A stretch of 64,000 nt of DNA, taken from positions 75,386 through 139,385 of the forward strand of contig NIVC01002802.1 in the NCBI GenBank assembly GCA_002269645.1, in the 5' to 3' direction. This DNA is from Macrostomum lignano. Lineage: Eukaryota. The translations under genes were made by a program, and so were the position numbers. Each line of letters starts with the position of its first letter. Position 1 is the stretch's first letter. A model generated the notes under the pieces. The model was given only the letters and a program-made list of their open reading frames with translations, did no database searches and was not told the DNA's origin. Below, piece by piece: positions 6,901-62,548 of this stretch.

Positions 6901-9900
6901 TGGAAGCAACAACAGCAAAGAAACAAAGCAGAAATACCGTTGAAACACACCTGGCATAACGACAGATCCCTCCCTGCTGCTGAAGCTGACATCCGGAACA
7001 TCAACGTGCCCAATGGAGGTGACGCATTTCTGCTCAACGCACTGCTCAATAATGGCCTGCTGCTCTTCTCCATCAGCGTCAACAACATCTTTGTACTTTT
7101 GCTTTTTAACAATCAGATCGATATAGGCGCTAATGAGTTTAGTGATGGATTCGCCTTCAGGAGTCTTGGCCGTGATTGCTCGGTCAGAGTAGCCGCCAAA
7201 ATCCAGAGTGAACCCGTGAACAGTGGCAGCCCATTTCTTCACAGATGTCAGTGGCCATTTCTTTAGAATTTGCTTAGTCTTCTGGTCTACGCTGTAGACT
7301 GAGTGCTTGGATACGCCAAATAGACGGGGCACGAGTTTGTTCTTGGATGTTAGTTTCTCCTGAGGGGATGAGAAAGTTAAATATATTTAAGATTTGCTAC
7401 GATTCTATTGTCATTTTACTTTGTTTACATCGTTTTAGAGGCATGCTTAGCGGCCTGAAGCATCTGATTATCAGCCTGAAGCATCTGATTATCAGCCTGA
7501 AGCATCTGATTATCAGCCTGAAGCATCTGATTATCAGCCTGAAGCATCTGATTATCAGCCTGAAGCATCTGATTTTAAGCCTGAAGCATCTGATTATCAG
7601 CCTGAAGCATCTGATTATCAGCCTGAAGCATGTGATTATCAGCCTGAAGCATCTGATTATCAGCCTGAAGCATCTGATTCTAAGCCTGAAGCATCTGATT
7701 TTAAGCCTGAAGCATCTGATTATCAGCCTGAAGCATGTGATTATTAGCCTGAAGCATCTGATTTTAAGCCTGAAGCATCTGATTCTAAGCCTGAAGCATC
7801 TGATTATCAGCCTGAAGCATCTGATTATCAGCCTGAAGCATCTGATTATCAGCCTGAAGCATCTGATTTTAAGCCTGAAGCATCTGATTCTAAGCCTGAA
7901 GCATCTGATTCTAAGCCTTAAGCCCCCATATTTCATTAGAAGTTAGATTATTAGCAGACAGTAACGACTCACCTTAACCAAGAAAAAGTTAATCCCGTAA
8001 GTCTCTAAAGAGCGGCAGAAGTTCACGTACTTCAGCTTGGCCTCAATCTCAGTGGCGCCCTGGCAGTTTTTCTGGGCGGCAAAAATCTTCTTTTCAATGC
8101 CCTTCACTTTCCGGTACTCGGCTGGTAGGAACTCGCGAAGACTGCAATTGGGAATTGAGCAAACTATTGGTGTATTTTAAATAGGCGCGACTCCACAAGA
8201 CACCCACAGTAAGAGAAAAAGACAGACAGACGTACTATAAGACAGACACTAAGACAGACACTGAGACAGACACTAAGACAAACACTGAGACAGACACTAA
8301 GACAGACACTAAGACAGACAATGAGACAGACACTAAGACAGACACTGAGACAGACACTGAGACAGACACTAAGACAGACACTAAGACAGACACTGAGACA
8401 GACAATGAGACAGACACTAAGATAGAAACTAAGACAGACAATGAGACAGACACTAAGACAGACACTAAGACAGACACTAAGACAGACACTAAGACAGACA
8501 CTGAGACAGACACTGAGACAGACACTAAGATAGAAACTAAGACAAAGACACAAACACAGATAATCACGCAAAGCCACCCGAGCACATCACTCAGACAGCT
8601 TCGCAACTTCACTCACTCCAAGCTGCCGCTCCTCTGCTTGCTGGGATCAAACGAGCCGAACTGCACGTGACACTGGAAACCAGCCAAGTCAACCGCCTGC
8701 TCCTGGGTGACCGGGTGCGACCCATTCAATATGGCCTCCTTTAGCTGAACGTAGAGCAGATTTAGCTGCACAGGGTCCCGGCCATCAATATTCTGATCCG
8801 AATAGAATAAGCGGCGTTTCAATAAAAGTACTTCGCGCTCTTGAATGCCCTGTTCGCGTAGAGTCTTGGAAGGATCCAACCAGTGCACTGAAACACATCA
8901 AAATGATGCGTGGTGATTCATTGGATTCGCATTTTTTTGGTCGAGGCCTCTAGGGCTCTAGGCTCATTTAATTGCCCCGGTGAGGGCTACACGTAAGGCA
9001 CACGTCAAGAGATGAAAGAAATGGGGAGGAGAGGGAGAGGAAAGGGAGAGGGAGGGGAGAGATGGAGAGTGATAGGGTAGAGGGAAGAGGGAGGGGAGAG
9101 AGTGATATGTAGAGTGAGAGGGAGAGCGAGAGTGACAGGGTAGAGGGAAGAGGGAGGGGAGAGAGTGATATGTAGAGTGAGAGGGAGAGCGAGAGTGACA
9201 GGTTAGAGTGAGAGTGAGAGTGACAGGGCAGAGAGTGAGTGAGAGTGACAGGGCAGAGAGTGAGTGAGAGTGACAGGGCAGAGAGTGAGTGAGAGTGACA
9301 GGGCAGAGAGTGAGTGAGAGTGACAGGGCAGAGAGTGAGTGAGAGTGACAGGGCAGAGAGTGAGTGAGAGTGACAGGGCAGAGAGTGAGTGAGAGTGACA
9401 GGGCAGAGAGTGAGTGAGTGAAAGGAGTGTCCTGGGACAGGGAGAGAGAGGGGGAGAAGAGAGGGGAAAAATGGGAAGGGAGATGAAAGGAATGGGAAGA
9501 GGGAGAGGGAGAGAGGGGGGGGAGAGGGAAAGAGAAAGGGAGAGAGGAAGGAAGGGAGAGGGTGAGGGGAGATGGAGAGAGTGGGAAAGGGAGGTGGAGA
9601 AAGAGAGAGCAAGAGCGGAGAGGCAGACGGGGAGAGGAAATTAATAAGAGAACTAATAAGCAGCAGTGGCAAAGGACTTTCATTTAAATTATTCAACATC
9701 AATCAAAAACCCAAAGTTATCCCAGTGGAGGTTTTAAGCCATATAAAAGTTTCCGAAAAGAGAAATCTGCAAGCTAGACTCAGAATATATTCTAAAATCA
9801 GTCTAAATATTTTTCTCACTACAACTGGAAAATAAAAGTTAGGCAAAAACTTCTTTATATATAAGTGCTATTCGAAAAATGAAGCTAAGTAGATTATTTT

Positions 9901-19526: not shown

Positions 19527-20845
19527 CAGGGGCGTCGGAACCGGGGGGGGGGGGCATGGGGAAGCCCCCCCTGCACTTTATAGCATGATCCTGCAGGTGC
19601 CCTTTTTGAATTTTAAGCAAGTGTCGGCCGGTGTTCGGCTTTGGCTTCTCTGAGTCTTGGAAGCTAAGGGTACCAGCTGATATAATAGTTCATGTTTTTG
19701 TTCTCATGCAATCCCATTCCATTAGTTTTTATCTAGTGCCTAAGCCTAGTGCTTTTAGGGGTCAGCAAACTTTTTACCTCAAGGGCCAGATTGAGAACAG
19801 CGCATGACTGCCCTTCTGGGTCCGCTTCGCTGAGCCCCCTAATTAAGCGAACGCGCGCCCAGCAGGAGTCCCTGGGCGGGAGAGAGGATAGGGAATAGAG
19901 AAGAGATCGAAATACGAGCGCAGGAGAAAGGAGAGGCGAAGGAATAAAGGAGAGGAGAGTAGACGAGAAAAGAGATAAAATAGGAGAGGAGAGAGGAGAG
20001 GAGAGATAAATGAGAAGAGGAGAGTCGAAAAATAAGAGAGAGGAGATCAGAGAAGGAGAGGAGAGAGGAGGGAAGGGAGAAGAGAATGGAGAGGAAACGG
20101 GAGATGAGAGGAGAGGAGAGTGGTGAGGAGAAGAGAGGAGAGGAGCGAGGTGAGGAGAGGTGAGGAGATGAGAGGAAGGAGAGGGGAGAGGAGAGGAGAG
20201 GATAAGGAAAGGAGAGGAGAGAGGTGAGGAGATGAGAGGAGAGGAGAGATGAGAGGAGAGGAGAGGAAAGGAGAGAGGAGAGGAGAGGAGAGGAAAGGAG
20301 AGGAGAGGAGAGGGGAATATGAGAAGAGAGAGGTGATCGGGAAGAGAGCTGAGAAGAGACACAATAATAAACATATCGAGCGGGCCGGATTGCTATTGTG
20401 AAGATTCAAAGGACCCAAGGCCGGATATAGAGAGGCTTTGCGGGCCACATTTGGCCCTCAGGGTACTGCAACTAAAGCACTAAAATGCCATCAGATAAAA
20501 GAATAAAGAGACAGCGCAAGAGGCAGGCAGCCAGGCAGAAGACAGGCAAGAGATCCAGAGAACTACTGGTCTTGCTCTGGCAATTTTCATTCATTTGAGA
20601 TATTTACTAAATAAATTGATAGTGCAGTGCAGTTGCGCAATGTTTGAATTAGTTTGAGAATTCAAACATTTTTCAGACTTTTGGCCACTTCCAACACAGA
20701 ATTGAATATTGGCGCGGTTGTCACAACTAATGTCACCTGACATAACAGCAGGAGTTTGGGTGCCCTTAGATTTAAAAAATAATGTGCAATGTGCCCTCCC
20801 ACCAATAGCCCCCCCCCCACTTTGAAATATGTTCCGACACCGCTG
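19527..20845. mobile_element. hAT-type MITE with nested element
   Basis: TIRs CAGGGGCGTCGGAAC / GTTCCGACACCGCTG (13/15); 8-bp TSD TACAGGGT (19519-26) vs TATAGGGT (20846-53), 7/8. Confidence 0.75.
19756..20470 (+). mobile_element. Nested Charlie-like MITE with internal (GAGAG)-rich tract
   Basis: TAGGGGTCAGCAAAC..AAGGGCCAGAT left end; GCGGGCCGGATT..AAAGGACCCAAGGCCGGAT..TTTGGCCC right part, shared with 14334-14540. Confidence 0.65.
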
Positions 20846-40303: not shown

Positions 40304-45000
<4,697 letters not shown>

Positions 45001-46519
45001 CTCCTACTGATAATCTTCTGTGTTATCTCTTTTCAGCTCGTCTCCTGTCCTCTATATCTTTAGAATCTTCTCGTCTCATTTTCACTACCCATTCAAATCC
45101 CCTCTTCAATTTTCAGTACTTTAGAAATTGGGGACTGCTTGATAAAAAGAAGCAAAGAAACAAAAGCAGATACGAATTTACATTTTTAACAAATCAAATC
45201 ACATCTTATCGTGAAAAAGCTACAAAATTAGCTCGTATTAATAGTAAACGAATAATAGCTCACAATAAAAAAATAAGTTTATTACATCGGTGTACACAAA
45301 TTAAAACAAAAGTGCAAACATTTTAGGCACATCTGCAGCAGTTAAAAGAGAAACTGTAAAATGTTTGTTTTTTCGAACAAAAATATTCTAAAGCTCTGAT
45401 CCTAAACAGCTTTATGCTACGCTTTTTCGTGAAAATACAAGTTAAAGAATTTTTACTTTTGAAACAACAAAAAGGCCCGACAAAATTGACACCGTAAAAA
45501 ATTGGACACATTAAAACAAATTTTTAAAAAAGTTACAGAAACACAAAAGCAACACATTGAAAGCAACGAAAAATCAAGAAGAAGCCAAAATCAACAAAAC
45601 AACACAAAAATTTAGGAGAACAACTCAATGATGCAGAAAATTTGCAACAGCTAAAAATTTCCAGCTGCGCGCAGTGGAGCAATTGTTTCAATAGCTTTTT
45701 AAAAGCGGAAAATAGTTAGCAGAATTATTCGTTACACTGAGCAATATTTTTGTTTTTAGTCGAGAACAAAGGGGCTGAGCAAAAGCAGCAGATGAGTTCA
45801 AATGAAGTAATAATCATGAAAAGATGGAAATAAGCAAGCATTTACAACTTGTACTTATAACTTGTGAAGCCTATGAAATAGACAGTCGAAACTTTGAAAT
45901 TTTACTAAAAGAAAACTAAAAACTAAAACAAAAGTATTGATGCAATGGCGGTAGAGAAGAAATGAAAATGCTATGCTGTGGTATACCGATATGTTGTGAA
46001 GTTAGCAAAAATTGTGATTTAAAAATTAGAAAGCAAATAACAAATATTTTTAATGTGAATTCAAATTTGCTGCATATAGAAAACAATTTTGTACGTTTTA
46101 AGCTACTGACATGCAGCTAGCAAGTAGCATTTATCACATTTTTCGCTATTTTTTATTGTTGAGAAGAAATAATAATAAATAGTGGATTATATTTTCCGAC
46201 AGATTTTGGAGTGACATCAAACGGGCAAGACAAGCGCAGTGCGGCATGATGCTTAGGCAATTAGGCAGAGAAAATGACAATATCGGTGCAAAAACAATCT
46301 GCAAGAAAATATTACGTATAGAGAAATGAACAAAAGAATTTTCAAAGGCACTTCGAATATCATTGCGTAAGCAGTTTCTATTTGAGAGCTTTAGCCATTT
46401 GGCATGAAGATAAAAATTTTAACAAAATTCCAAGCAAAGCACAAATAATAGTGGTTTCTGATTTCACCAAACAAATAAAGTAGGACTCTTTCTAAGACTG
46501 AGAGTAACTTAGGGTCTGA

Positions 46520-49524: not shown

Positions 49525-52500
49525 ATGCTGCTAACTCGTCCAATTCTGGGAGTTTTTCTCATTTTTTCACTTGGCAGGAATGCTGATGGTAAGTGTTGCA
49601 TCGTCATCTGTTATTTTCATGCGTGAGAGTCCATAAAGTTCAATGAAAATTTGTCTTCATACAGCAACTTTGATAGATGTTCAGCCGAGTAATAAACGTC
49701 GTTATATGCGTCGGTGTCAGTCATGTCGTTTATCAGCGACGTCCATCGACTTCGATCGTACATCGCATATATACAGTGTATGTGCGTAGACAGACATAGG
49801 AGTGTTGTCAATAAGGTTCCCGTTTTCAGTTTAGTGCATTTAAACAAAATCTGACGGAATTTTTTGCTAACGAAAAGATTCATGCATGTACTTGTAGGTA
49901 GTCACTGAAATGGCACGCGAAGGCGTATTCAGCATGCCAGTGAAGTATGAGACAGACTAGGCCTACGAGCTAAGGTCTGCGATGCTTCACGCCTGCCCCC
50001 ATCTTCAGCAGGTCAAGGCTGGTGGGAGGTCTGCACCCTCTATTTGCCTCTGGCAGCCGCAGACTCCCCCACGCTGTCTCGCAAGTCGACCCAGGGGTAC
50101 TCGTCCCCGCGTGTGTTCAAGGCAGACCCTAGGGCTGCTGGACAGACTGGGCTCCGGCGCTGGCGACCCTATCCAGTGGCTTCGGCCGAATTTGGGTATG
50201 CGGGTCTGGCTCACCAGCCTGCAGGCCGTGGTACTGCTTAACGTACCCTCTAATGCCTAAGGTGTTTGACCGTGCCGATGGGCTGGAAGGCCGGGGAGTA
50301 GTCCGGTCGCTAGCGGTCCTTTTTTCAAACCGGCTGGCTTGAGGTGTCGGCCAGTCGGGTACTCAACTCGCATAACGAGTAGCCCTCCCCCGCTTTTCAG
50401 CTATGGCCACTAACGCCACCATCCCTAAAGAAACTGACCCGGTCGCCTCTGGCTCACCGGGATCAGCCGCTCCGGTAGCTACCACTGGTAGCACCAACGC
50501 CCAACCTGGTCCAACCGGGCCAGCTGACGCTGCCGCCGATCACCCTGGCCGCCAGTCTAGCCGACCGCGCACGGCCGAGTCTCGACGACAGCGGAACATC
50601 CGCCGCAACCGTAAGCGGCAGGAGAAGCGGGCTGCTGCTGCGTCTGAGGAGGGCACGCAAGCCGCGGTGAGGCCTTCGGGAGCCACCGCAGCGGGGAGGC
50701 CCTCTGGGGAGTCCGGTGGCGCGGCTGGGCCGTCAGGAACCGCCGTGTCCTCGGGCTCTCAGGGGGGCAACCCTGCCGGCCTACCGCCTTCCAAAGACAA
50801 AGCGGCCCCGCTCAAGACCTCCGAGTCCTACGCGTCCAAGGTCAAGCAGCCGCTGCAACCCGCCGTGATGATCCTCGGCGGGGATTTCGACCTGACGCCC
50901 GAGCAGCTCGACGTCGCGTGGCGTACCATCGACGAGGGCTTGCTCAATCTAACCCTGGAGGGCGTCTTCGTGGACATCGTCAAGTCCACCAAGGCGAACG
51001 GGTGCATCCTACTGTGGTGCAAATCCGAGGAGAGCACCCAGCTCCTGCGGGATCAGCTGCCCAAGTTCGACTGGCACAGCGACCTGGGCCAGCTGACCTT
51101 CGCCTTGGAGAGCGAGCGGCCGAAGACCATCCGCCATCGGATTTGGGTCCCGGCCGACAGTGCAATCAAGTCCGGGGAGCAGCTGCGGCAGCTCCTGCTC
51201 AAGCGGCACCCGGATCTCGACGCCAGTGGTCTTGTGTACCACAGCACGGTCCGCAAGGGCACGACCGGGGCCACAGTCATCCTCGGCCTGACGGAGGGAT
51301 GGGCCAAGCGGCTACCGCACGGCACAAACCTCCACCTTGGTCTCCATCAACTGACCATCCTCCGCTGTGAGGAGGGCAAGGTGGAGACCAAGAAAGACGG
51401 GAAGCGCGCCGCTCCCGGAGCTGGGGCTCATGCCCCGCCGGCCAAGCGGCAGCAGCAACCCGATCCCGAGCCTAACAAGGCTATTCGCGCTGCTGAGTCC
51501 GCCTCGCGCGGACGTAGACCCGCCCGCAGTAGCCGGCGGTCCGGTCTAATCCAGCGCGCACTTGACGAAGCTCAGTCTCTGAGACTTCACCTCGAGCAGA
51601 CTCGTGCCGCTCGAAAAAACACTGAAAGCCAGCCGAGGGAACTGGACGACGGCACGGCTCAGCCTTCCAACTGGTGGGATTACCACCAGGAGGACGCTGC
51701 CGGCCGAGCTCAGACTCCCGACGGCGGGGCGCAAGGCGAAGGCAGCAGCCGTACCCCAGTCGCTGGGGAGGAGGGCGGTGTAGCGCGGCTAGGTGACTCA
51801 CCTGCCGTGGGCGCCGTGTCCGCCTCCGCGGCGGCTGGGGAGGCGGCTGAGCCTGAGCCAATGGAAATTGGCGACTCAACTCTCACCGATGAGGCTGAGA
51901 ATGAGTTGCTTTTCTCCTCCCCTGGACAGTAGACATGACTGTCTCCCAGGGCATCCACTGCTTGCAGGTCAACCTGCAGCACAGCATTGCTGCTTCAGTC
52001 AACCTCTTGAAGCACACTGACCAATACGTGCCAGGGATTATCCTTATCCAGGAACCTTGGACGCTTAGGGGCAGCCCCCAACATGTCCCCACCGGCTACC
52101 AGTGTTTAACCGCTGGTACCCGGGAGGGAAACCTGGCACCAAGATCCTGCATCATGGTGTCCAGTTCTATTAACGCATGGCTCAGATCAGACCTGTCCAC
52201 CAGGGACATCTGTGTCATCCAGTCTGAAGACATACTCCCTGGGAGGACTACCCTCATCGCCTCGGTTTACCTACCGGGCGACGGCGAGATGATCCCAGTA
52301 GAGCTTGTCACACTGGTCGAGCTCTGCTCCACCAGAAACTATGAGCTGCTCGTGGCAGGTGACATCAATGCCCACCACACCCACTGGGGCAGTTCTGATA
52401 TAAACCAGAGAGGTGAAGACTTCCTGGCTTATATTGCTACTACAACCCTTGAGTTCTGTAACTCGGGTAGTACCCCTACCTTCAATAACGGACGCCGATC

Positions 52501-55500
52501 GGAGGTGCTGGATGCCACCCTCGCCACGCCCAGGCTCTTCCAGAGCACTAGGGAATGGCGGGTGCTTCCTGAGGCGTCCCTCTCCGATCACAAGTTCATC
52601 TCTTTCACGCTGGCCAGCGCCCGTAACGCAGGCCAGCTTTACTGGAAACGGAATGCTAGGAATACCGACTGGACCGCCTTCAGGCTTGCCCTGGAGGAGA
52701 CCTATCGTTGCACTAGCGCTCCAGTCTCCATCAACACCTGCGAAGAAGCAGATGAATTTGCGGCCGCACTTACGGACTCGCTCACTGCTGCCTTCGAAGC
52801 CTCATGCCCACTAAAGGCATATAAAGGCAAACAGTCGGCCCCATGGTGGAACCCGCAGCTTGGCGACCTCCGTCGCAGAGCCAAAAGGCTTCACCGCAGG
52901 GCCCAAAAAACTAAAAACCCGGCCGACCAAACCGCCTACCTGAACTCTATCCACGAGTTCAAGAGGCAGGTTAGGAACGCCAAAACCAACAAGTGGCGCG
53001 AATACTGTGAGGAACTTGAGGGCTCCCGCCCCACCTCCAGAATCGTTAAAGCCCTCACCCTGGACAAAATGTCCAAACTCTCCTCAGTCAAGAGAGCCGA
53101 CGGCTCGCTCACTGAGAACCCAGGAGAAACACTGGAAGCGATGCTAACAGCGTTTTTCCCGAACGAGCCAGCTAGGCCCGGCCCCCCTGACCACTCAGTG
53201 GGCGGACACGTACTGGCTGACTCAATCATCACGGAGGACCGCGTTACTAAAGCTGTCTCCTCCTTCAAACCCTTCAAATCCCCAGGACCGGACGGCGTTG
53301 TGCCAGCCTTCCTGCGGGAGGCGGTGAAATGCACCGGTTTCCTGCGGAACCTTTGCCGGCTTCTGAAAGCCTGCATTGTGCTCGGCTTTGTTCCGAAATC
53401 CTGGACCGAGGCCAAGGTGGTCTTTATCCCCAAGCCTGGCCGACCGGACTACCGGTCCATTAAATCCTTCAGACCAATTAGCCTCACCTCCTCATTGGTG
53501 AAGCTGTTAGAGAGACTGGTGCTCTGGCGCCTCCTCTCTGTGGAACTGAAGAACAAGCCGCTCAGTGAGAACCAGCATGCCTTTCGGGCAGGCAGGTCCA
53601 CGGAGAGCGCGCTTCACGTTCTGGTTGACATGCTGGAGAAAGCCGTTCTTGGTAATGGCTACGCTCTCGCTGTCTTCCTCGACATTGTTGGAGCCTTCGA
53701 TAATGTCCTCTTTGAGGCCTTTGACAGAGCTCTACGTGCTAGAGGAACCCACTCGCACCTCACCCGGTGGATCATGTATATGATCAGCCACCGTACTGCC
53801 ACCGCACACCTGTTGGGCCACCAACGGACGGTAACCGTCTGCAAAGGCAGCCCCCAGGGCGGTGTCCTCTCTCCAGTTCTCTGGAACATGGTCATCGATG
53901 AGCTCCTCCAGGACAGCCATCTTGACCCCATCCTCAAGGTCGGTTACGCCGATGATGTCACAGCCGTGGCATCCGGACCGTCACCTGAAACCCTTAGAGA
54001 TCTTTTGCAAAACTTCATTCGCTCTGCTGAACGTTGGGCGGACAGGTGCGGCCTCAGGCTCTCCGAGACCAAAACTGTCGCGATCATGTTCACCAGCAGG
54101 GTAAACTGGCGTATTCGCCCACTAAAGCTTTACGGGGTGGAAATTCCATCCTGCAAGCAAACCAAGTGTCTCGGCGTTACGCTGGACCACCGGCTGAGCT
54201 GGTCCACCCACGTCCAGGCCAAAACCAAAAAAGCCCTCGCGATTCTTGCGCAGCTGCGCAGAGCCGTCGGCACCACCTGGGGCCTCACCCCAAAGCGTCT
54301 CTGGTGGATCTATACCGCAATGGTCCGACCGGCCGTTACATACGCCGGCCTGGTCTGGACCAGCGCCTTGCAGATTAAAACCTGCCACGAAGCCCTCAAA
54401 AAGGTGCAGGGACGTGCGTGCCGCATGATCCTGAATGCCCCGCTCTCTGCTCCCTTTGACGGCCTCAACGCCTTTCTCTGCCTCCCGCCTCTGGACATCT
54501 TTGTCCGTCGCGAGGCTGCTAAAACCACCCGCCGGCTCATCGAGGCTGGTGTTAGCTTCAAGCCACAAAGAGCGATGGCGAAGCGCAAGCTCCTGCCGCA
54601 CTCTGACCTGTGCCTTAAAGTTCTGGAGGAGAGTGGGAGTGCGGCTGTCCTTTCGGACGCTGAACCGCGCTCCCTCAACCTCTACCAACGCTTCAAGGTC
54701 ACGATCCCCTCCAGGGAGAACGCCAACGACAGCTGGGCCCCTCAGGAGGTTCACTGCTTCACTGACGGATCCTCCAAAGACGGTTTATCCGGCTTTGGAG
54801 TCTGCATCCTTATCAACGGCCGCGTGATTGCTACTCACGCCCAACACACTGGCAGACTCTCCAGCGTCTTCCAGAATGAAGTCCTTGCCATCAGCTCCTG
54901 TGCAGCTGAGCTCCACCGCAAGGACTTCAAGGACAGAAGAATCTTCTTCCACTCTGACAGCCAGGCCGCTTTACAGGCCCTGTGTCACACCACTACGAAC
55001 TCCCGAACAGTCCGCGACTGTATCGGGCAGCTCAACAAGCTGGCTCGGAGGAACACCGTCCGGCTCACGTGGATCCCAGGACACGCCGGCTTCAAAGGTA
55101 ACGAGCTCGCCGACTCCCTCGCTAAGGCGGGCTGTTCCGGCTCGCCCCTTGGCCCCGTGCCCCTGGCCCCCATCCCCGCCACAGTCATTAATCGTCAGAT
55201 TAACGACTGGGCGGACATCCTGCACTTGCGCAGATGGGATGGTATCTCCAACTGCCGCCAATCTCGTGCGGCAGTGCCCAATCCGTCCCTCAAGCTGCGG
55301 AGAATCCTTTTGAATCAAAATCGAAAAGATATCCGCGCTCTCACTATGACCTTCACAGGTCACGGTTGCTTTGCCAGGCACTGCTTCCTCCGATGTGTTC
55401 GCCGGAGTGAACTCTGCCCCTTCTGCAGCCTCGAGAATGAAGATGCCATGCACTTCGTCTGCTACTGCCCGGCCTTCAACCGAGACCGGCTCAACCACCT

Positions 55501-57645
55501 CGGGCCCAACCCGTCCCTGGACGACGTTTGCCGGCCCGAGAACATCCCACGGCTCATCCGGTTCCTCCGGGCCACCAAGCGAGCCTCCGTCTTCCCCACC
55601 GAAGACAACGCTGCAGACAGGACCGGCAGACCTCCCTGACCGGCCCCGCGCCCTAGCCTATGCGGGTCTTTCAGGGATTAGCGGAATGGGCGACGCTCGC
55701 CTCCCCGCTGCGTCTTCGGACCGCCCTGCAGCTAAGTCAAGTAAGTCAAAGTCACTGAAATGAAAAATAATATTTTAGTTGCATTTCAGTTAGCATTTTT
55801 AAGAAACTAATTGTCATTTTGGACCACGTTTCAGCCTCGTGCGGGAGATACAAATACCTGCGTCGTTTCAATTCCATTCTTATCAACACTTCAATCAGCA
55901 CCGAACTCGTCAACCTGACCGGGATGAACTCCGATCAAAGCTGTATTTACTCTTGCAAGCTAAAAGAATGCGCCATAGTTGTCGTCATGACAACCGCTAG
56001 CCTGTGCCAACTAGTTATCGTTAGAGACGCTTCGAAAACACCCGGACCACCTGATAGCCACGTGGAACGAATAATTGGAGCGGAACCGGGCGCCAGGATG
56101 TGGACAGTGGATGGATTCGAAAAGCTGCTTAGAAGGAGACAGATTAATCTGACATCTCTAGCTTTCGAAAATAGGAAAAAGTTTGAAAGTAAGTCGCGCA
56201 GCAAACTCAAGCAGTAGCATTCAAAATTCTTATAACAACAAAAAACGTGTTAAAGGAAGCGGAGCGCCACACGACCCCAATGCATTCACAATTGGCCAGT
56301 GTGTTGTTGTGCGATTCAGAACTATGAGGGCTGACCCCGGGCGTAGAGATGTAGAGGAGTGTACATGCCAGACAGGACTAGAACGTCAGGGGTCAGCAGA
56401 ATTGGAAGAATTGACTCAGCATTGAATTAGGGACGATGTCGCCCTAGGCGTTACGTCAGGGTGGACGTTATTCCGTCATGAAATTGTTATAAATATAGAT
56501 TAAGGGCCACGTCAACTGAAGCTACAGAATAGGAATCCTAAGTAGAGTTCCGGACTAAACCGGTTTACTCTCGTAGCCTTTAGTCTCACGCGCACTTTTC
56601 CTGCAGACAGCAACACGGGCAGGAGCGGCTCTGTTCAGTTCGCTCTGATCAACGTCACCGGCTGCTACCGCCTCGAGGCGACCGGAGCCAAAGGCGGTAA
56701 AATTCCTTCACAAAATAAAGGCGGATATGGAGCTGTGATTAGTGGCAGATTTAATCTACAAGCTGGTATCTCACTAAATATTGTTGTTGGACAAGCGGGA
56801 GGTGGAGGAGGCAATGCAGATAATGATGCTCGAGGCGGCGGCGGCGGCAGCTTTGTGTACAGAGCTGCGGACAGCCAACTACCACTCATCGTGGCTGGCG
56901 GAGGAGGCGGGGCTGGATTCGGAAAACCAGGTAAGAGAAAATTTATAGACTATTTATTATAGACTGGAGTTCAATTTTAATATCTTAATAGTGTTTCTCT
57001 TAGGGCTAGTTCATTTCTGGCTGTAGTGCCAAGGTAACCAGGCCATATTAATTAGCCTTAGGTACTTTTCGTGCGATCCATGCGCATGAGGTACGTCTCA
57101 CCTTTAAGGCTTGGGCTGTACATGCCTTTAACTAACTCCCTAATTATTGTACAGGCTGCCAAGGGGAGCCAGGCCTGAACGCGAGCAATGCTAATGATTA
57201 TCGCCCTGAGACGTTTGGTTTCGGAGGCGTCAACGGGAATCCTGGAAGTAATGATCCCAGCAACACGCCTTCTGATAGCTACCACGGCGGCTGCGGCGCC
57301 GGCTGGCTAAGAAGGGCCGTCAACCAGAGGCAAAGTGGCAAAGACGGAGAGCGAGGCGGCGGTCTGGCCGAAGTCTGGGTCGGAGGTCACGGCGGCGGCA
57401 ACGGAAACGATGGCGGTTTCGGCGGAGGCGGAGGAGGCGGAAGAAGCGATTCAATTCGCAAAGGAGCTGCCGGTGGAGGAGGCGGCTATAGCGGAGGCGG
57501 CGCCTCTCTGAACGGAGGCTCCGGCGGAGGCGGAGGCGGCTCGTTCTGCGGCGGAGTCCAGTGTTCTGATGGCGGCACTTCGGACAGGGATCATGGCAAA
57601 GTTGTACTGGAGTTGATCGCCCCGTTTGCTGACAGCTGCGAGTGA
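49525..57645 (+). CDS. Secreted protein: signal peptide, Cys-containing PAN/Apple-like module, ALK/LTK-type glycine-rich domain (no TM or kinase)
   Basis: All-phase-1 exons 49525-49588 (MLLTRPILGVFLIFSLGRNAD), 55835-56188, 56607-56930, 57155-57645. TGCYRLEATGAKGG, LNIVVGQAGG, GGGGGSFVY, PLIVAGGGGG, GGFGGGGGG, GGGGGYSGG, GGGGGSF; AATAAA at 57655. Confidence 0.85.
49913..50151 (+). ncRNA. HDV-like self-cleaving ribozyme at the retrotransposon 5' end
   Basis: P1 GCACGCG (49913-19)/CGCGUGU (50108-14) with G1.U wobble; P2 CCCAG (50090-94)/CUGGG (50147-51); P3 GGG (50095-97)/CCC (50105-07); L3 UACUCGU; P1.1 AC/GU (50099-100 with 50115-16); P4 hairpin 50117-50142; J4/2 CAGA with candidate catalytic C at 50143. 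Confidence 0.85.
50403..51932 (+). CDS. Retrotransposon ORF1 (509 aa; basic disordered N-terminus, central domain resembling LOA-type ORF1, no CCHC knuckle)
   Basis: Long ORF directly upstream of ORF2; central region aligns by eye with the ORF1 remnant of the second element. Confidence 0.9.
   Translation: MATNATIPKETDPVASGSPGSAAPVATTGSTNAQPGPTGPADAAADHPGRQSSRPRTAESRRQRNIRRNRKRQEKRAAAASEEGTQAAVRPSGATAAGRPSGESGGAAGPSGTAVSSGSQGGNPAGLPPSKDKAAPLKTSESYASKVKQPLQPAVMILGGDFDLTPEQLDVAWRTIDEGLLNLTLEGVFVDIVKSTKANGCILLWCKSEESTQLLRDQLPKFDWHSDLGQLTFALESERPKTIRHRIWVPADSAIKSGEQLRQLLLKRHPDLDASGLVYHSTVRKGTTGATVILGLTEGWAKRLPHGTNLHLGLHQLTILRCEEGKVETKKDGKRAAPGAGAHAPPAKRQQQPDPEPNKAIRAAESASRGRRPARSSRRSGLIQRALDEAQSLRLHLEQTRAARKNTESQPRELDDGTAQPSNWWDYHQEDAAGRAQTPDGGAQGEGSSRTPVAGEEGGVARLGDSPAVGAVSASAAAGEAAEPEPMEIGDSTLTDEAENELLFSSPGQ
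51935..55639 (+). CDS. Retrotransposon ORF2 (1234 aa): APE endonuclease, reverse transcriptase, RNase H, C-terminal CCHC
   Basis: LIQEPW, GDINAH, SDHKFI; [35 protein letters not shown]; [38 protein letters not shown]; CPFC..EDAMHFVCYCP. Confidence 0.97.
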   Translation: MTVSQGIHCLQVNLQHSIAASVNLLKHTDQYVPGIILIQEPWTLRGSPQHVPTGYQCLTAGTREGNLAPRSCIMVSSSINAWLRSDLSTRDICVIQSEDILPGRTTLIASVYLPGDGEMIPVELVTLVELCSTRNYELLVAGDINAHHTHWGSSDINQRGEDFLAYIATTTLEFCNSGSTPTFNNGRRSEVLDATLATPRLFQSTREWRVLPEASLSDHKFISFTLASARNAGQLYWKRNARNTDWTAFRLALEETYRCTSAPVSINTCEEADEFAAALTDSLTAAFEASCPLKAYKGKQSAPWWNPQLGDLRRRAKRLHRRAQKTKNPADQTAYLNSIHEFKRQVRNAKTNKWREYCEELEGSRPTSRIVKALTLDKMSKLSSVKRADGSLTENPGETLEAMLTAFFPNEPARPGPPDHSVGGHVLADSIITEDRVTKAVSSFKPFKSPGPDGVVPAFLREAVKCTGFLRNLCRLLKACIVLGFVPKSWTEAKVVFIPKPGRPDYRSIKSFRPISLTSSLVKLLERLVLWRLLSVELKNKPLSENQHAFRAGRSTESALHVLVDMLEKAVLGNGYALAVFLDIVGAFDNVLFEAFDRALRARGTHSHLTRWIMYMISHRTATAHLLGHQRTVTVCKGSPQGGVLSPVLWNMVIDELLQDSHLDPILKVGYADDVTAVASGPSPETLRDLLQNFIRSAERWADRCGLRLSETKTVAIMFTSRVNWRIRPLKLYGVEIPSCKQTKCLGVTLDHRLSWSTHVQAKTKKALAILAQLRRAVGTTWGLTPKRLWWIYTAMVRPAVTYAGLVWTSALQIKTCHEALKKVQGRACRMILNAPLSAPFDGLNAFLCLPPLDIFVRREAAKTTRRLIEAGVSFKPQRAMAKRKLLPHSDLCLKVLEESGSAAVLSDAEPRSLNLYQRFKVTIPSRENANDSWAPQEVHCFTDGSSKDGLSGFGVCILINGRVIATHAQHTGRLSSVFQNEVLAISSCAAELHRKDFKDRRIFFHSDSQAALQALCHTTTNSRTVRDCIGQLNKLARRNTVRLTWIPGHAGFKGNELADSLAKAGCSGSPLGPVPLAPIPATVINRQINDWADILHLRRWDGISNCRQSRAAVPNPSLKLRRILLNQNRKDIRALTMTFTGHGCFARHCFLRCVRRSELCPFCSLENEDAMHFVCYCPAFNRDRLNHLGPNPSLDDVCRPENIPRLIRFLRATKRASVFPTEDNAADRTGRPP

Positions 57646-58437: not shown

Positions 58438-61042
58438 TTATTTCTTTTCAACGGAGTTAACATCGATGTCCTTGCGACTTGGCGAAGAGTTTGTGTTGTT
58501 GTTCGAGCCTCCGTTGCTCGTAGCCGAACTATCACGTCCAACTGTTTCAACTGGCGGCATGCCGCTGCCACCTGCCGCGCTCATGGAAACCTGATGCCCA
58601 CCGACTGGACTGGAGCAGGACTCAACTCGGGTGGTTGGGATTTCCTCGGCTATGGCAAATTTTCCGCTATGAGAGCCGCAATTTTCAGCCGACATCTCGT
58701 CGAACTTGTGCTGATCAGTAATAGACTGCAGCGACGATGGACAGCCGGGCATGCAGGGAAGCGAGTCCTCAAAGCCGAGCTTGTTGAGCAGCCAATAAGT
58801 AGTCATCCTGGTTTTGCCCTGGGATCAATAGAAAAAAATTAATAGAGAAAAATTGAATTTCTCAGAAAGAAATCGGCTTGAAAATTCACCTTCACTTCAA
58901 TAATCCCGCGCTCCTTGATAACATAGCTGGAATCGTTGATGATGTAATTCCTGGCTGCTTCCGTCATCTGGATTGCGTTGCCTTTAAGAGGGATTAGGAA
59001 TAACGAAATATGTTACTCGAAGTTGCTTACGAAAGTTAAGTCCTACAGCACTTACCTCGGCCATTGGTTTCCATTCGGCTTGAAGTATTAACAGTGTCAC
59101 CGAACAAACAGTAGCGAGGCATTTTAGAACCAACCACTCCTGCGACTACCGGACCTGCAAAAAAGTATGTAGCAATCAAATTTCAACGCTAAAATTTTCC
59201 AGTCTGAAGCATCTCAATGAGATGAAACTTGCCCGAGTGCATTCCGCCTCGAAGCTGCAGCTTGTGTCCGGGCATGTGCTTGATCTCGATGTGGCCAGTG
59301 TGGTGCAGCAGGTCGAGGCCCATGCGACAGATCTCGTCAGTGTGTCGATTTCCGATACGAGTTGGAACGCCTGCGGTAATTAATTATACATGCAGTGAGT
59401 ACAACTAAAAGTTGTTTCGGGGAGTATACTCAAACTTTTACGCCAAATAAAGTTCAGTCAAACCTACCACTAGCCACCATGTAGGAATCGCCAATTGTTT
59501 CAACCTTGTACACATTGTAGAGGCATATTCTGGAGTCAAAGCAACTGTAAACAGCGTTGAGCATGTCAACTATTTGAATTGGCGCGCTCTCCGATACTAA
59601 AGCAGCGAAGCCAATCAGATCGCTGAAGAATATCGTAGATTGGTCGAAACTTTCAGCTGCAATGTTTTTTCCACGCTTAAGCTGCTCAGCAACGCTTCGA
59701 GGGATCATTTGGTAGAGCAGCTCGTTCGTTCGCTGACGCTCGTTGTTGAGATGATTCGTCTGCGTTGCCAGGGTTAAAGCGTAGGACTGAACATCCGACA
59801 TCACAGCCTGGATGGTAATAACGATCAATGGCAAACCAAGATGGTGATGCACAGAAAGCTGATTGTCACGGACAGATCTGCTATATCGTCCTGGCCGAAT
59901 CTTTCAGATCCAGAATCACAGATTCTACAAGCCTCAATTGCACTTCCAGAATAGCATCCATGTAGATTGTCATATTGTCGAACCATTTCGTCGACAATAC
60001 GCTAGATTTTCTTGTCAAATTCTTGTATAGAATCTCCGCTCTCATGACCGTCAGGCTTTTCTCCACCGGATGACTTGATTTATTTAGCGCCCTAGCCAGA
60101 TTGATGGTCACCTCTTCCGAGTAGAGACTAGCGGCTTTCCGGTTGCTGGTACTGACAAAGTGCTTCTGCAGGTACCATTGATAGTCAGCATGGCCGCGGA
60201 AGCTCCCATTTGAGAAGAAAACAGCTCCAAGAGAGCGTTCAACGCCCATGTTCTCTTTGCAGATAACAAGCATAACATAAGCAACCATCTTTCGCCAGAG
60301 TGAGCCATCCCGGGACTTTTGAATAGCAGTGTAAACCCAATCAATGAACACCTGTGTCAGTTCGGAATAGAACCTGATTTCCCGCGTACAGGCTGGTTTT
60401 GAAGTGGTCTAATTCTCTTCTATGCTTGCTTAATTCTTCCATGAAATTTTCCCGACTACGAAATGTGTCCTTGTGGTGCAACAACTGCTTCTGTTGCAGC
60501 TCTTGTCTTAGGGATAAGGAATACTGGCTTGGCCATACCGACAACTGCAGCAGAGCTCTGTCCGTCTCCGGGTACCGATCGGTCATGATCATGCGGGTCT
60601 CGGAGCTGCCGCTGCCGCAAAACAGCGCCGTCATGTCTCTTTCCCGTTGAAGCGCGTGAATAACCTGGCCAGTCTCCATCACGAATCGCATGGACTGTCG
60701 TACGGCCGCGTTCAGATCGTTCCGCTGACTCACAGCGGTCATTTCGCTGATGGTGATGCAGCCTAGAGCGATGATTGGTACAAGGATGAGGATCATGATC
60801 TTGGCCATCTGCTTGCGCTTGCCGCTGCGAGTCAGCGGGTTGCCATGGCACAATCGACCTAGACAGCCTCTGTCGGCGCTACTACTGCTGCTGCGAGAGG
60901 CACTGCGTCGATGCTTTTTGCCTAATTTTTCAATATTTTTCAGCGCCGTGGTTGTGCCCTGGCTCGCGGTGGACGATGACGAGACGTATGACTGGGCGCT
61001 GTCAGCGCGATGCTGCTGCTGATCGGCCTCGTTAGCCACCAT
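58438..61042 (-). CDS. Membrane guanylyl cyclase with NIT-like (nitrate/nitrite-sensing type) sensor between two TM helices; reading frame broken by three 1-nt indels
   Basis: TM1 [15 protein letters not shown]; [12 protein letters not shown]; TM2 [20 protein letters not shown]; coiled coil [11 protein letters not shown]; [57 protein letters not shown]. Exons 61042-59468 (indels about 60382, 59894, 59831), 59370-59233, 59154-59056, 58981-58890, 58818-58438. Confidence 0.9.
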
Positions 61043-62548
61043 TCTCGCGCTCTGAAGGAGGATGAGTGAGAGCTGGGTTCCTGACGGCAAGTCTTTGCTC
61101 CTGTATATATATATAAGCCTTAAGCCTTTGCGGCTTTAACTGATGGGTAACACACCCCTGTCTGTGTGTGCTCACAACAATCGAACAGCTCTTTGAATTT
61201 ATTGTGTCTTTCGGAGGTTCCTTTGAACGGCACACGAAGCGCGTTGTTGCTTCTACATCGGGCAACAGAAGCAAAGTGTAGCGCGTTGCCAATTAATTAT
61301 CTGGAGATGATTAACTCACCCAGAGATGATTCTCTGCAATCTGAGGATTGGGTAAAGTTGCTAATTGCTTTTCACTTCCCCCGAGGAGGAAGTCCCTCCA
61401 CAGAGGCCGACAAACAGGGCGATTTAATTATCCTGTGCTCCAGTCACGAAGCCCAGTGTTGTCCACTTCTTGCACCGCTTGAATACCCTCGACTCGCGCC
61501 CGATTATGGAATTTTTCCACCTGTTTTTCAGCCGCGCTTTCATCATAGGCGCAGATTTGCAGGCAAATTGGGCTAATTGTGGAGAGCTAGCTGATTCTGT
61601 TAGCTAGTAATTGGTCGCGTGTCCGGTTTAATAATGCATGGTTAAATTATAGATTCGGCCAGCCTCGTTTTACGCGGCATATTTTTTTTTCTAAGGTTTC
61701 TGGAGCGACATGCATTTTAAGCACGTAAAAAAGGGACTCAAAAAAGATTGACGTTTTCGTTCGAACCTGATTATTATTACTTTGCATCCTTATTTAGTAT
61801 TGCTTGATGACTTTACCAGGTAAGAAAAGACAACTGTACAGATTAGTTATAGTTACTTAGAGTCGGTGCTTATTAAAATGATAGCTCTCGCAGGTTGGTT
61901 GTATTCATGCAAACACGATGGGATTTTGTCTTAACAACGCTTGAGCTCAGGCTTGCTCAAATTATTTTGGGGGTAGGGTAAAGTAAGGGGATTTGTAAAT
62001 TGAGTAGCATGCAACCCATTATTAATAAAGAAATCTGAGTGACTGAACAAATGAATGCGAGAAATATTAAAGCAATCGGACGCATGCGTGGAAAGAGAGA
62101 GAAACTCAGTTTCCTGTACCTGTACTATCAAATGAATTTCAAGGTGTTGTCTGTTTTATATAAGCGTAACTCCACAGGTTACTGCCTGTATGTGTGATTA
62201 AGATAGACTGATGCTAGTTCGCAGAAGTGACAGAAAGATTAACTAGCTAACAGCATCCACAGGTCTATACTTGCTAATCAGTTAGCTGGTGTTTCAGTGC
62301 GATACCAGCTACCTAAATAGCAATTCCCGAATTACCATCAAAGTTTACTTCCTCTTCCAGCGAGTTTTCTTCACGTTTAAACTATAATTGCCGAGTTAAT
62401 CTAGTTCAGCTGTTACAACCGGCTCTCGATAGAGCTACTCTGCAGAGCCCGCACGGGTCGCTCTCTTGAGTTTGAATTTCGTCATCGTTGTAGTCCTCGT
62501 CGACGCTACTAGCCGCGGGACAGTCGTCATAGTCGATGTCATCGAAAG

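What the first reader, a model, noticed from the sequence alone, without database searches (positions are those of the whole stretch)
49913..50151. Complete HDV-like ribozyme whose cleavage site coincides with the retrotransposon 5' boundary
Seen: every element of the nested double pseudoknot is present in order (P1 7 bp with G1.U, P2 5 bp, P3 3 bp, 7-nt L3, P4, J4/2 C-A-G-A). P1.1 is A-U/C-G instead of the usual C-G/C-G, a compensatory-looking change. J1/2 is about 170 nt and has its own stems (AGGCGU..AGCAU/AUGCU..ACGCCU; GGGAG-GUCUGC/GCAGACUCCC). G1 (49913) is the first base after the 13-bp TSD. Known: HDV-like ribozymes define the 5' ends of R2, RTE, L1Tc and some LOA-clade elements. Inference: this element is processed out of read-through transcripts rather than needing its own promoter. 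The -1 base is G, which is usually the least favourable in HDV ribozymes.
Basis: partly seen in the sequence, partly recalled or inferred. Interest (0 to 1): 0.9.

Follow-up and report, generated by a model that had tools for sequence, protein, structure and literature searches.

The report
HDV-like ribozyme heading a flatworm LINE
The first 239 bases of an intact jumping gene (a LINE retrotransposon) in the flatworm Macrostomum lignano fold like a known type of self-cutting RNA. The predicted cut falls exactly at the element's first base, so this is a well-supported new example of a mechanism already described in other LINE families.

Summary
An intact 5,837-bp non-LTR retrotransposon (49913-55749, + strand) sits between exact 13-bp target-site duplications. 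It encodes ORF1 and an ORF2 with APE endonuclease, RT and RNase H domains.

Bases 49913-50151 contain every element of an HDV-like nested double pseudoknot, in the right order. P1 starts at the first base after the duplication, and J1/2 is 170 nt.

A strict descriptor finds this site only in the whole window, and in 0 of 200 shuffles.

Two relatives carry the same architecture with compensatory changes in P1, P1.1, P2 and P4, and no broken core pair except one U·U:
- L001: ORF2 60% identical, ribozyme region 63% identical.
- L002: lacks the P1 5' strand.

The L001 contig begins at the homologous G1.

J1/2 is a conserved, structured domain.

Rfam does not detect the motif. Cleavage itself, and independence from a promoter, remain untested.

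5'-terminal HDV-like ribozymes are already documented for R2, R4/Dong, RTE, Baggins and L1Tc, with P1-P1' spacings from 23 to over 700 nt. This is therefore a new member of a known kind, of moderate interest (0.35 rather than 0.9).

The parts
49900..49912 (+). 5' copy of the 13-bp target-site duplication AGTCACTGAAATG
   Evidence: Exact second copy at 55750-55762; 0 of 100 shuffles give two copies.
49913..49919 (+). P1 5' strand (GCACGCG). The predicted cleavage is 5' of G49913, which is also the first base of the element.
   Evidence: Seven pairs with 50108-50114, including G1·U. L001 keeps 6 of these pairs with two double changes.
49920..50089 (+). J1/2 peripheral domain, 170 nt: three hairpins inside a closing helix
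   Evidence: Same architecture in the window and L001. RNAalifold predicts 47 pairs, 12 of them with compensatory changes.
50090..50094 (+). P2 5' strand (CCCAG)
   Evidence: Pairs with 50147-50151. L001 has CUCAGA/UCUGAG and L002 has CCCAAA/UUUGGG.
50095..50097 (+). P3 5' strand (GGG)
   Evidence: Pairs with 50105-50107; invariant in all three sequences.
50098..50104 (+). L3 loop UACUCGU. A50099 and C50100 form P1.1.
   Evidence: L3 is UCUCCGU in L001 and UUCUCGU in L002. U1, C5, G6 and U7 are invariant.
50105..50107 (+). P3 3' strand (CCC)
50108..50114 (+). P1 3' strand (CGCGUGU)
50115..50116 (+). P1.1 3' strand (GU)
   Evidence: Window pairs are C50100-G50115 and A50099-U50116. L001 has U181-A195 and C180-G196, both double changes. 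L002 has C-G plus a U·U mismatch.
50117..50120 (+). J1/4 (UCAA)
   Evidence: GCAA in L001 and UAAA in L002.
50121..50139 (+). P4 hairpin
   Evidence: Folds at -8.9 kcal/mol. The L001 P4 is 10 bp with an unrelated sequence (-24.5) and the L002 P4 is 8 bp (-14.8).
50140..50146 (+). J4/2 (GGACAGA) with the predicted catalytic C50143
   Evidence: A C lies exactly 3 nt before the P2 3' strand in all three sequences: CAGA, CUGC and CGUG.
50147..50151 (+). P2 3' strand (CUGGG); 3' end of the ribozyme
50152..50402 (+). Remainder of the 5' UTR, conserved with L002 and L001
   Evidence: MAFFT alignment; blastn at 68-77% identity to L002.
50403..51932 (+). ORF1 (509 aa). No Pfam domain; the central domain is predicted to be tandem RRM-like.
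51935..55639 (+). ORF2 (1234 aa): APE endonuclease, reverse transcriptase, RNase H and a C-terminal Cys/His motif
   Evidence: Pfam; PDB sequence hits to LINE-1 ORF2p, R2 proteins and the TRAS1 endonuclease.
55640..55749 (+). 3' UTR ending in ...GCUAAGUCAAGUAAGUCAA, with no poly(A)
   Evidence: a conserved block is shared with L001.
55750..55762 (+). 3' copy of the target-site duplication

Best explanation
[quoted passage not shown] The LINE has an ORF2 with APE endonuclease, RT and RNase H domains.

Proposed mechanism:
1. Transcription enters the element from upstream.
2. The RNA folds into the nested double pseudoknot. The conserved 170-nt J1/2 domain brings P1 and P2 together.
3. C50143 catalyses scission of the bond between G49912 and G49913.
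4. This releases an element RNA whose first nucleotide is G1, bearing a 5'-OH.
5. Full-length cDNA copies inherit that end, so the DNA boundary of the element equals the cleavage site.

What is shown here:
- The motif and its rarity by chance.
- The TSD-defined boundary.
- Conservation of the fold with compensatory changes in two relatives.
- The same terminal nucleotide in L001.

What is inferred from established work on R2, RTE, Baggins and L1Tc ribozymes:
- Catalysis itself.
- Co-transcriptional processing.
- Any role of the folded 5' end in translation or protein binding.
For: - Exact TSDs place the element start at 49913.
- The full motif was verified pair by pair. It is unique in the window and absent from 200 shuffles.
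- 0.07% of element 7-mers could replace the P1 5' strand. For L001 the equivalent figure is 0.25%.
- L001 has a ribozyme region 63% identical and an ORF2 60% identical. It keeps P1 (A-U to C-G, C-G to U-A, G·U to G-C), P1.1 (both pairs double-changed), P2 (C-G to U-A plus an added A-U pair) and a P4 of unrelated sequence.
- L002 keeps P2 (G-C to A-U plus an added A-U), P3, L3 and P4.
- The L001 contig begins at the nucleotide homologous to G49913.
- The pseudoknot-free MFE of L001 recovers P1, P3 and P4, with z = -3.0.
- The window MFE recovers P2, P3 and P4. Forcing P1 and P3 costs 3 kcal/mol before P2 (-6.7) is counted.
- L3 keeps the invariant U and G, and a C sits 3 nt before P2 in all three sequences.
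- Literature: P1 of 6-7 bp, P1-P1' spacing of 23 to over 700 nt, J1/4 of 0-2 nt, and little primary-sequence conservation beyond the catalytic C and four other positions (PMC3774820). Structured J1/2 domains activate large HDV-like ribozymes (PMC4908430).
Against: - There is no biochemical or transcript-end evidence.
- No Rfam family, including the HDV-type ones, matches even at E <= 10 on the 501-nt or the 71-nt stretch.
- Only three sequences support covariation, and only two of them cover P1.
- P3 never varies.
- L002 has a U·U mismatch in P1.1.
- J4/2 after the C is not conserved (AGA, UGC, GUG).
- The window's unconstrained MFE uses part of the P1 5' strand in another helix.
- My descriptor was written after seeing the candidate.
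- The library type of the L001 sample is unknown, so its contig start may be a repeat-boundary break rather than an RNA end.
- No sense-strand host gene that would supply read-through transcripts was identified near this copy.
Confidence: 0.8

Rival explanations
1. Dual system. The element has its own internal promoter that starts transcription at or near G1, as in L1Tc Pr77. The ribozyme only trims the fraction of transcripts that start upstream, so read-through is not the main source of element RNA.
For: L1Tc combines an internal promoter and an HDV-like ribozyme in the same 77 nt (PMC3383444, PMC3185411). The 170-nt J1/2 domain and the remaining 250 nt of the 5' UTR are conserved beyond what the catalytic core needs. 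No sense-strand host gene was seen next to this copy.
Against: No promoter test is possible with these tools. A promoter starting exactly at the first nucleotide of P1 would be a coincidence, unless cleavage is what defines the end. Conservation of J1/2 is also explained by the known 'pinch' role of such domains (PMC4908430).
Confidence: 0.3
2. Non-catalytic structured 5' UTR. The HDV-like fold is conserved as a binding site for the element's proteins or as an IRES-like module, but it no longer cleaves, or never did.
For: R2 protein binds a pseudoknot within the R2 ribozyme region, and the ribozyme fold is proposed to act in translation initiation (review PMC6765202). Some R2 ribozymes with a correct fold show no cleavage in vitro (PMC3774820). 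J4/2 after the C varies, and L002 has a mismatch in P1.1.
Against: The residues needed for catalysis rather than for the fold alone are kept in all sequences: the C three nt before P2, the U and G of L3, and G at +1. P1 begins exactly at the element's first base in two lineages. That is expected if cleavage creates the end and is otherwise unexplained.
Confidence: 0.1
3. Chance resemblance in a GC-rich 5' UTR.
For: The core without P1 turns up in 16% of shuffled elements. A loose descriptor with a 6-bp P1 gives many hits in the window. Rfam finds nothing.
Against: The full motif appears in 0 of 200 shuffles. Placing P1 at the exact boundary has a chance of about 7e-4. There are at least six double compensatory changes across P1, P1.1 and P2, plus a resequenced P4, in relatives that are only about 63-66% identical in this region.
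Confidence: 0.03

Closest known systems
R2 retrotransposon ribozyme (Drosophila and other animals, including the planarian Schmidtea R2)
   Same: Both are HDV-like double pseudoknots at the 5' end of a non-LTR element. Both have a P1 of 6-7 bp, a long and often structured J1/2 (P1-P1' spacing of 23 to over 700 nt), a variable P4, and little primary-sequence conservation beyond the catalytic C and a few L3 positions. In Drosophila, cleavage falls at the exact 5' junction (PMC3774820).
   Different: R2 is a single-ORF, site-specific element with a restriction-like endonuclease, inserted in 28S rDNA and co-transcribed by Pol I. In many R2 lineages P1 uses upstream 28S sequence. The element here has two ORFs and an APE endonuclease plus RNase H, is dispersed, has a 13-bp TSD, and keeps P1 entirely within the element.
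L1Tc ribozyme (L1TcRz, ingi clade, Trypanosoma cruzi)
   Same: The host element encodes APE endonuclease, RT and RNase H, and is flanked by TSDs of about 12 bp. The HDV-like ribozyme starts at nucleotide 1 of the element and releases it from longer transcripts (PMC3185411, PMC6765202).
   Different: L1TcRz is compact (77 nt), overlaps an internal promoter, and sits in a single-ORF element of a protist. Here the ribozyme is 239 nt with a 170-nt J1/2 domain, in a two-ORF element of a flatworm.
drz-Agam-2 family (RTE elements of Anopheles) and other large HDV-like ribozymes
   Same: The J1/2 carries a stable peripheral domain, which activates the ribozyme by pinching P1 and P2 together (PMC4908430). 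The ribozyme is located at the 5' end of a LINE.
   Different: RTE elements lack RNase H and have a different ORF organisation. The J1/2 here is larger and multi-branched. No sequence similarity was detected, as Rfam gave no hit.
Baggins1 (LOA clade, Drosophila), R4 and Dong 5' ribozymes
   Same: [quoted passage not shown] LOA-clade elements also carry APE endonuclease, RT and RNase H.
   Different: I could not obtain these sequences, so neither clade membership of the Macrostomum element nor homology of the ribozymes was tested. ORF1 here has no zinc knuckles and is predicted to be tandem RRM-like.

Membership tests
HDV-like self-cleaving ribozymes | Nested double pseudoknot in the order P1, J1/2, P2, P3, L3, P3', P1', P1.1, (J1/4), P4, J4/2, P2' | tested here: met
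   All segments are present in order, with 17 of 17 core pairs standard. It is the only descriptor hit in the window, and 0 of 200 shuffles give one.
HDV-like self-cleaving ribozymes | P1 of about 6-7 bp whose first nucleotide (usually G, often G·U) is the cleavage site, with P1' immediately 3' of P3' | tested here: met
   G49913·U50114 plus 6 Watson-Crick pairs. L001 has 6 bp with G1-C. The P1 range of 6-7 bp is from PMC3774820.
HDV-like self-cleaving ribozymes | A 3-bp P3 closed by an L3 of about 7 nt carrying the conserved U and G (reverse wobble), with two L3 nucleotides forming P1.1 with the bases just 3' of P1' | tested here: met
   GGG/CCC with L3 UACUCGU. U1 and G6 are invariant in 3 sequences. 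P1.1 is C-G plus A-U, double-compensated in L001, with one U·U mismatch in L002. Conservation of the L3 G is from PMC3774820.
HDV-like self-cleaving ribozymes | Catalytic cytosine in J4/2, a few nucleotides 5' of the P2 3' strand | tested here: met
   C50143, C228 (L001) and C143 (L002) each lie 3 nt before P2'. Only the presence of the C is shown, not its function.
HDV-like self-cleaving ribozymes | Helices supported by covariation among homologues | tested here: met
   Double changes occur in P1 (2), P1.1 (2) and P2 (1 in L001, 1 in L002, plus a concerted added pair). P4 is resequenced. Limits: 3 sequences, P1 seen in only 2, and P3 invariant.
HDV-like self-cleaving ribozymes | Match to a curated covariance model of the family (Rfam) | tested here: not met
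   No HDV-type family is found at gathering score or at E <= 10, nor in L001 or L002. This is expected to be insensitive, because the 170-nt J1/2 separates P1 from the core and the models cannot score pseudoknots.
HDV-like self-cleaving ribozymes | Site-specific, divalent-ion-dependent self-scission giving 2',3'-cyclic phosphate and 5'-OH ends | not testable with these tools
   Needs in vitro transcription and a cleavage assay.
5'-terminal ribozymes of non-LTR retrotransposons | Located in a full-length autonomous non-LTR element | tested here: met
   Intact ORF1 and ORF2 (APE endonuclease, RT, RNase H), exact 13-bp TSDs, and a 3' tail repeat.
5'-terminal ribozymes of non-LTR retrotransposons | Predicted cleavage site coincides with the 5' junction of the element in independent copies | tested here: met
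   In the window, G1 is the first base after the TSD. The L001 contig starts at the homologous G. That is only two copies, and the second is a contig end whose cause is unknown.
5'-terminal ribozymes of non-LTR retrotransposons | Element RNA in vivo begins at the cleavage site with a 5'-OH | not testable with these tools
   No transcript-end data are available.
   No reference LINE sequences or names were available. Database relatives are unnamed. Only the domain order APE endonuclease, RT, RNase H and the similarity of the endonuclease to TRAS1 are known.

The most novel reading that the evidence does not exclude
The HDV-like ribozyme may be a lineage-specific acquisition of one group of Macrostomum LINEs. 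It is absent from the 29-36% identical relatives examined. Its conserved, multi-branched 170-nt J1/2 domain, together with the conserved downstream 5' UTR, may serve a second function such as an internal promoter, an IRES-like module or a binding site for ORF1p or ORF2p. That would make the 5' UTR a composite processing and expression module rather than a bare ribozyme.
Probability: 0.3. Interest if true: 0.5.

Novelty: new member of a known kind. Interest (0 to 1): 0.35.

Why it matters
- It adds a well-supported HDV-like ribozyme to a free-living flatworm (Macrostomum lignano, a regeneration and transgenesis model), in a two-ORF LINE that carries RNase H.
- Rfam-based annotation misses the ribozyme because of its 170-nt J1/2 insert.
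- The known LINE-associated ribozymes in the flatworm Schistosoma mansoni are twister variants (PMC8501958). I found no paper linking Macrostomum with HDV-like ribozymes.
- It gives a precise, testable definition of the element's RNA 5' end.
- It supplies a natural large J1/2 domain with covariation data for studying how peripheral domains activate these ribozymes.
- It does not change the current picture of how such elements are processed.

Tried and rejected
- **Rfam.** No HDV-type hit on the whole window at gathering score, in E-value mode on 49800-50300 or on the 71-nt core, or on L001-L004.
- **Other copies in the window.** Only a second, 39% identical LINE on the minus strand (ORF2 43996-40304). 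It is 5'-truncated inside ORF1, so it has no 5' UTR to compare.
- **Exact-protein look-ups** of the window's ORF2 and ORF1: nothing on record.
- **ORF1 homology searches**, single sequence and 3-sequence profile: only P0077 (L002).
- **P0002** (57% identical ORF2): the contig had no retrievable DNA.
- **Collection scans.** ORF1 profile against metagenome contigs. Core DNA pattern against metagenome contigs and genome contigs. ORF2 against viral contigs. None gave a hit.
- **Distant ORF2 relatives** L003, L004, L005 and L006/L007 (29-36% identical): no HDV-like core upstream of ORF1 and no usable TSDs. Clade-wide presence is therefore not supported.
- **Loose descriptor** (6-bp P1, no L3 or P4 constraint): too many chance hits to be informative.
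rejected in favour of a covarying hairpin.
- **Read-through source.** ORFs flanking this copy were scanned with Pfam. The only hit was a minus-strand gene with a NIT domain 4 kb downstream.
- **MAFFT alignment of the 3' half** of the ribozyme is structurally wrong because P4 lengths differ. Pairs were therefore tabulated by hand-assigned coordinates and checked by script instead of with the count of structure pairs.
- **Ruminski et al. 2011 (PMC3308841)** is not held in the library.
Full report
**What is in the window**

The finding lies at the 5' end of a complete non-LTR retrotransposon.

- The 13-mer AGTCACTGAAATG occurs exactly twice in the window, at 49900-49912 and 55750-55762. None of 100 shuffles gives two copies.
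- The bases just outside the two copies differ. The duplication is therefore exactly 13 bp, and the element is 49913-55749 (5,837 bp).
- ORF1 is 50403-51932 (509 aa) and has no Pfam domain.
- ORF2 starts two bases later, at 51935-55639 (1234 aa). It carries APE-type endonuclease, reverse transcriptase and RNase H domains. By sequence it resembles LINE-1 ORF2p, R2 proteins and the TRAS1 endonuclease.
- The 3' end is ...GCTAAGTCAAGTAAGTCAA, with no poly(A).
- The element is 60% G+C in a flank of about 38-46% G+C.
- A UniRef gene model of Macrostomum lignano is 100% identical to 39% of ORF2, and many other hits are from that species. The window is therefore M. lignano or a very close relative.
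- Intact ORFs and perfect duplications indicate a recent insertion.

**Check of the observation**

| Element | Coordinates | Sequence / note |
|---|---|---|
| P1 | 49913-19 / 50108-14 | 7 bp, including G1·U |
| J1/2 | 49920-50089 | 170 nt |
| P2 | 50090-94 / 50147-51 | 5 bp |
| P3 | 50095-97 / 50105-07 | GGG/CCC |
| L3 | 50098-50104 | UACUCGU |
| P1.1 | C50100-G50115, A50099-U50116 | 2 bp |
| J1/4 | 50117-50120 | UCAA |
| P4 | 50121-50139 | hairpin |
| J4/2 | 50140-50146 | GGACAGA; C50143 is three nt before P2' |

Chance controls:

- A loose descriptor is not specific. With a 6-bp P1 and no L3 or P4 constraints it gives many hits.
- A strict descriptor gives a single hit on both strands of the 64-kb window, namely this site. 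It gives none in 200 dinucleotide-preserving shuffles of the GC-rich element.
- The core without P1 appears in 16% of shuffles. I wrote that descriptor after seeing the candidate, so the independent tests below carry more weight.
- Only 4 of 5,830 7-mers of the element (33 of 63,993 in the window) could pair fully with the P1 3' strand and start with G. One of them sits exactly at the TSD-defined first base.
- Sliding the 3' partners by 1-3 nt drops the paired fraction from 17 of 17 to 3-10 of 17.

**Relatives and covariation**

Two related elements with 5' UTR sequence were retrieved.

- **L001** is a 6,492-nt Logan contig from run ERR14788467. Its ORF2 is 60% identical. Its first 237 nt are 63% identical to the window's ribozyme.
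- **L002** is a JGI metagenome contig whose ORF1 is 47% identical. It begins inside J1/2, so it lacks the P1 5' strand.

Both have the same architecture.

L001:
- P1 is 1-6 / 189-194.
- P2 is 170-175 / 232-237.
- P3 is GGG/CCC.
- L3 is UCUCCGU.
- P1.1 is U181-A195 and C180-G196.
- P4 is a 10-bp hairpin of unrelated sequence.
- A C lies three nt before P2'.

L002:
- P2 is CCCAAA/UUUGGG.
- P3 is GGG/CCC.
- L3 is UUCUCGU.
- P1' is CGCGAGC.
- P1.1 is C-G plus a U·U mismatch.
- P4 is 8 bp.
- A C lies three nt before P2'.

Changes mapped through the structure-blind sequence alignments, relative to the window:
- P1: A-U to C-G, C-G to U-A, and G·U to G-C. The seventh pair is lost in L001.
- P1.1: both pairs are double-changed in L001.
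- P2: C-G to U-A in L001 and G-C to A-U in L002. Both relatives also have an extra A-U pair next to P3, gained on both strands.
- P4: a different sequence in each, but a clean hairpin in all three.

That makes at least six double compensatory changes in the short core helices against one mismatch. P3 never varies, so it says nothing either way.

Thermodynamics agree:
- The pseudoknot-free MFE of L001 contains P1, P3 and P4, with z = -3.0.
- The window MFE contains P2, P3 and P4.
- Forcing P1 and P3 in the window costs 3 kcal/mol, less than the -6.7 kcal/mol of the P2 duplex that a pseudoknot-free calculation cannot add.

**The boundary coincidence recurs**

The L001 contig starts at GCCTGC. 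This aligns column for column with the window's GCACGC at 49913. In a second, diverged lineage the first recoverable nucleotide is thus again the first nucleotide of P1.

I cannot tell whether this contig end is an RNA end or an assembly break at a repeat boundary. Either reading puts the family's 5' terminus at G1.

A DNA boundary that coincides with the predicted scissile bond is what is expected if cleavage creates the RNA end that is then reverse-transcribed. It would be unexplained for a merely structural 5' UTR.

**The J1/2 insert**

The 170 nt are not a spacer. The window and L001 share a multi-branched domain of three hairpins inside a closing helix. Twelve of the 47 RNAalifold pairs show compensatory change.

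It covaries, becoming GGGGGUCCC/GGGACCCCC in L001 and GGCAGGAUG/CAUCCUCCC in L002.
It competes with a covarying hairpin.

**Comparison with what is known**

HDV-like ribozymes at LINE 5' ends are established.
- PMC3774820 reports them for R2 throughout its range, including a planarian R2.
- It lists 5'-end cleavage for R4, Dong, baggins, L1Tc and RTE.
- It gives the family's latitude: P1 of 6-7 bp, P2 of at least 5 bp, J1/4 of 0-2 nt, a highly variable P4, and P1-P1' separations of 23 to over 700 nt. The only rigid conservation is the catalytic C and four other positions, including an L3 G that pairs with an L3 U.
- PMC4908430 shows that stable J1/2 domains activate large HDV-like ribozymes.
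- L1Tc is the closest host element in gene content (APE endonuclease, RT, RNase H; TSD of about 12 bp; ribozyme from nucleotide 1) (PMC3185411, PMC6765202).

Against this background, the 170-nt J1/2, the A-U/C-G P1.1 and the variable J4/2 tail are all ordinary variation.

From my own knowledge of the HDV ribozyme structures, not tested here:
- The L3 U/G, the two-pair P1.1 formed by L3 positions 2-3, the spacing of the catalytic C from P2, and an xCAA-like J1/4 all have counterparts in the viral ribozymes.
In any case that base is target DNA and differs between insertions.

**What is not shown**

- No Rfam family matches. I regard this as insensitivity to the long insert and the pseudoknots, but it is a failed membership test.
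- Cleavage, its products and in vivo ends are untested.
- The inference that the element needs no promoter is not supported by any result here. L1Tc shows that a promoter and a ribozyme can coexist (PMC3383444). I found no sense-strand host gene next to this copy.
- More distant relatives (29-36% ORF2 identity; L003-L007) show no HDV-like core upstream of ORF1. The ribozyme may therefore be confined to this Macrostomum lineage, or it may have diverged beyond my descriptor.
- I could not assign the element to a LINE clade.

**Verdict**

- The interpretation as an HDV-like 5'-processing ribozyme is supported, at about 0.8 for a functional ribozyme and about 0.9 for the fold.
- It is a new member of a known kind. 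I found no paper linking Macrostomum with HDV-like ribozymes, and the known ribozymes of schistosome LINEs are twister variants (PMC8501958). There is therefore modest taxonomic and annotation value, but no conceptual surprise.

Noticed in passing
window 40304-44440 (- strand): A second LINE of the same broad group. It has an intact 1230-aa ORF2 (43996-40304) that is 39% identical to the focal ORF2. It is 5'-truncated inside ORF1 near 44440, where it abuts a GGAGA-type simple repeat (about 44450-45100).
   Followed up: partly
window about 3700-7000: A large tandem array with an 8-bp period, about 370 repeat units.
   Followed up: no
window 20100-20336 and 44500-44900: Purine-rich simple repeats in inverted orientation relative to each other, about 71-81% complementary over 90-217 nt.
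   Followed up: no
window 59881-61090 (- strand): Two adjacent ORFs match the Pfam NIT (nitrate/nitrite sensing) domain, with E = 3e-12 and 9e-8. They are probably exons of a host receptor-type gene.
   Followed up: no
window 50152-50402: The 5' UTR downstream of the ribozyme is also conserved with L002 and L001. Conserved features include CCGGGGAGUAGUCCGG and a hairpin just before the ORF1 AUG. The window copy lacks a block of about 55-90 nt that is present in both relatives. This suggests a further functional RNA module.
   Followed up: partly
window 55640-55762; L001 5880-5975: The 3' UTR block UUAGCGGAAUGGGCG...CCCUGCAGCUAAGUCAA is conserved between the window and L001. The tail unit (G)UAAGUCAA occurs twice in the window and once in L001. 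The DNA just after the element starts with AGTCAC (the window's TSD) or AGTGAC (L001). This hints at a target preference or at tail-target microhomology during priming.
   Followed up: partly
window 50823-51422 (ORF1 residues 141-340): The conserved core of ORF1 has no Pfam match. AlphaFold2 models it (mean pLDDT 71, from only 2 sequences) as two beta-alpha-beta-beta-alpha-beta units. All the top Foldseek hits in the PDB are tandem RRM proteins such as IMP3, hnRNP A1 and U2AF65, though TM scores are only about 0.3. ORF1p is probably an RNA-binding protein without zinc knuckles.
   Followed up: partly
window 51930-51937: The ORF1 stop codon and the ORF2 ATG are separated by only 2 nt. This suggests that ORF2 is translated by termination-reinitiation or a similar coupling.
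   Followed up: no
L003, L004, L005, L006/L007: Elements with 29-36% ORF2 identity from other samples show no HDV-like core upstream of ORF1. L006 and L007 carry identical ORF2s with a 5' UTR of at most about 125 nt. L004 ends in an (ACAAT)n tail.
   Followed up: partly
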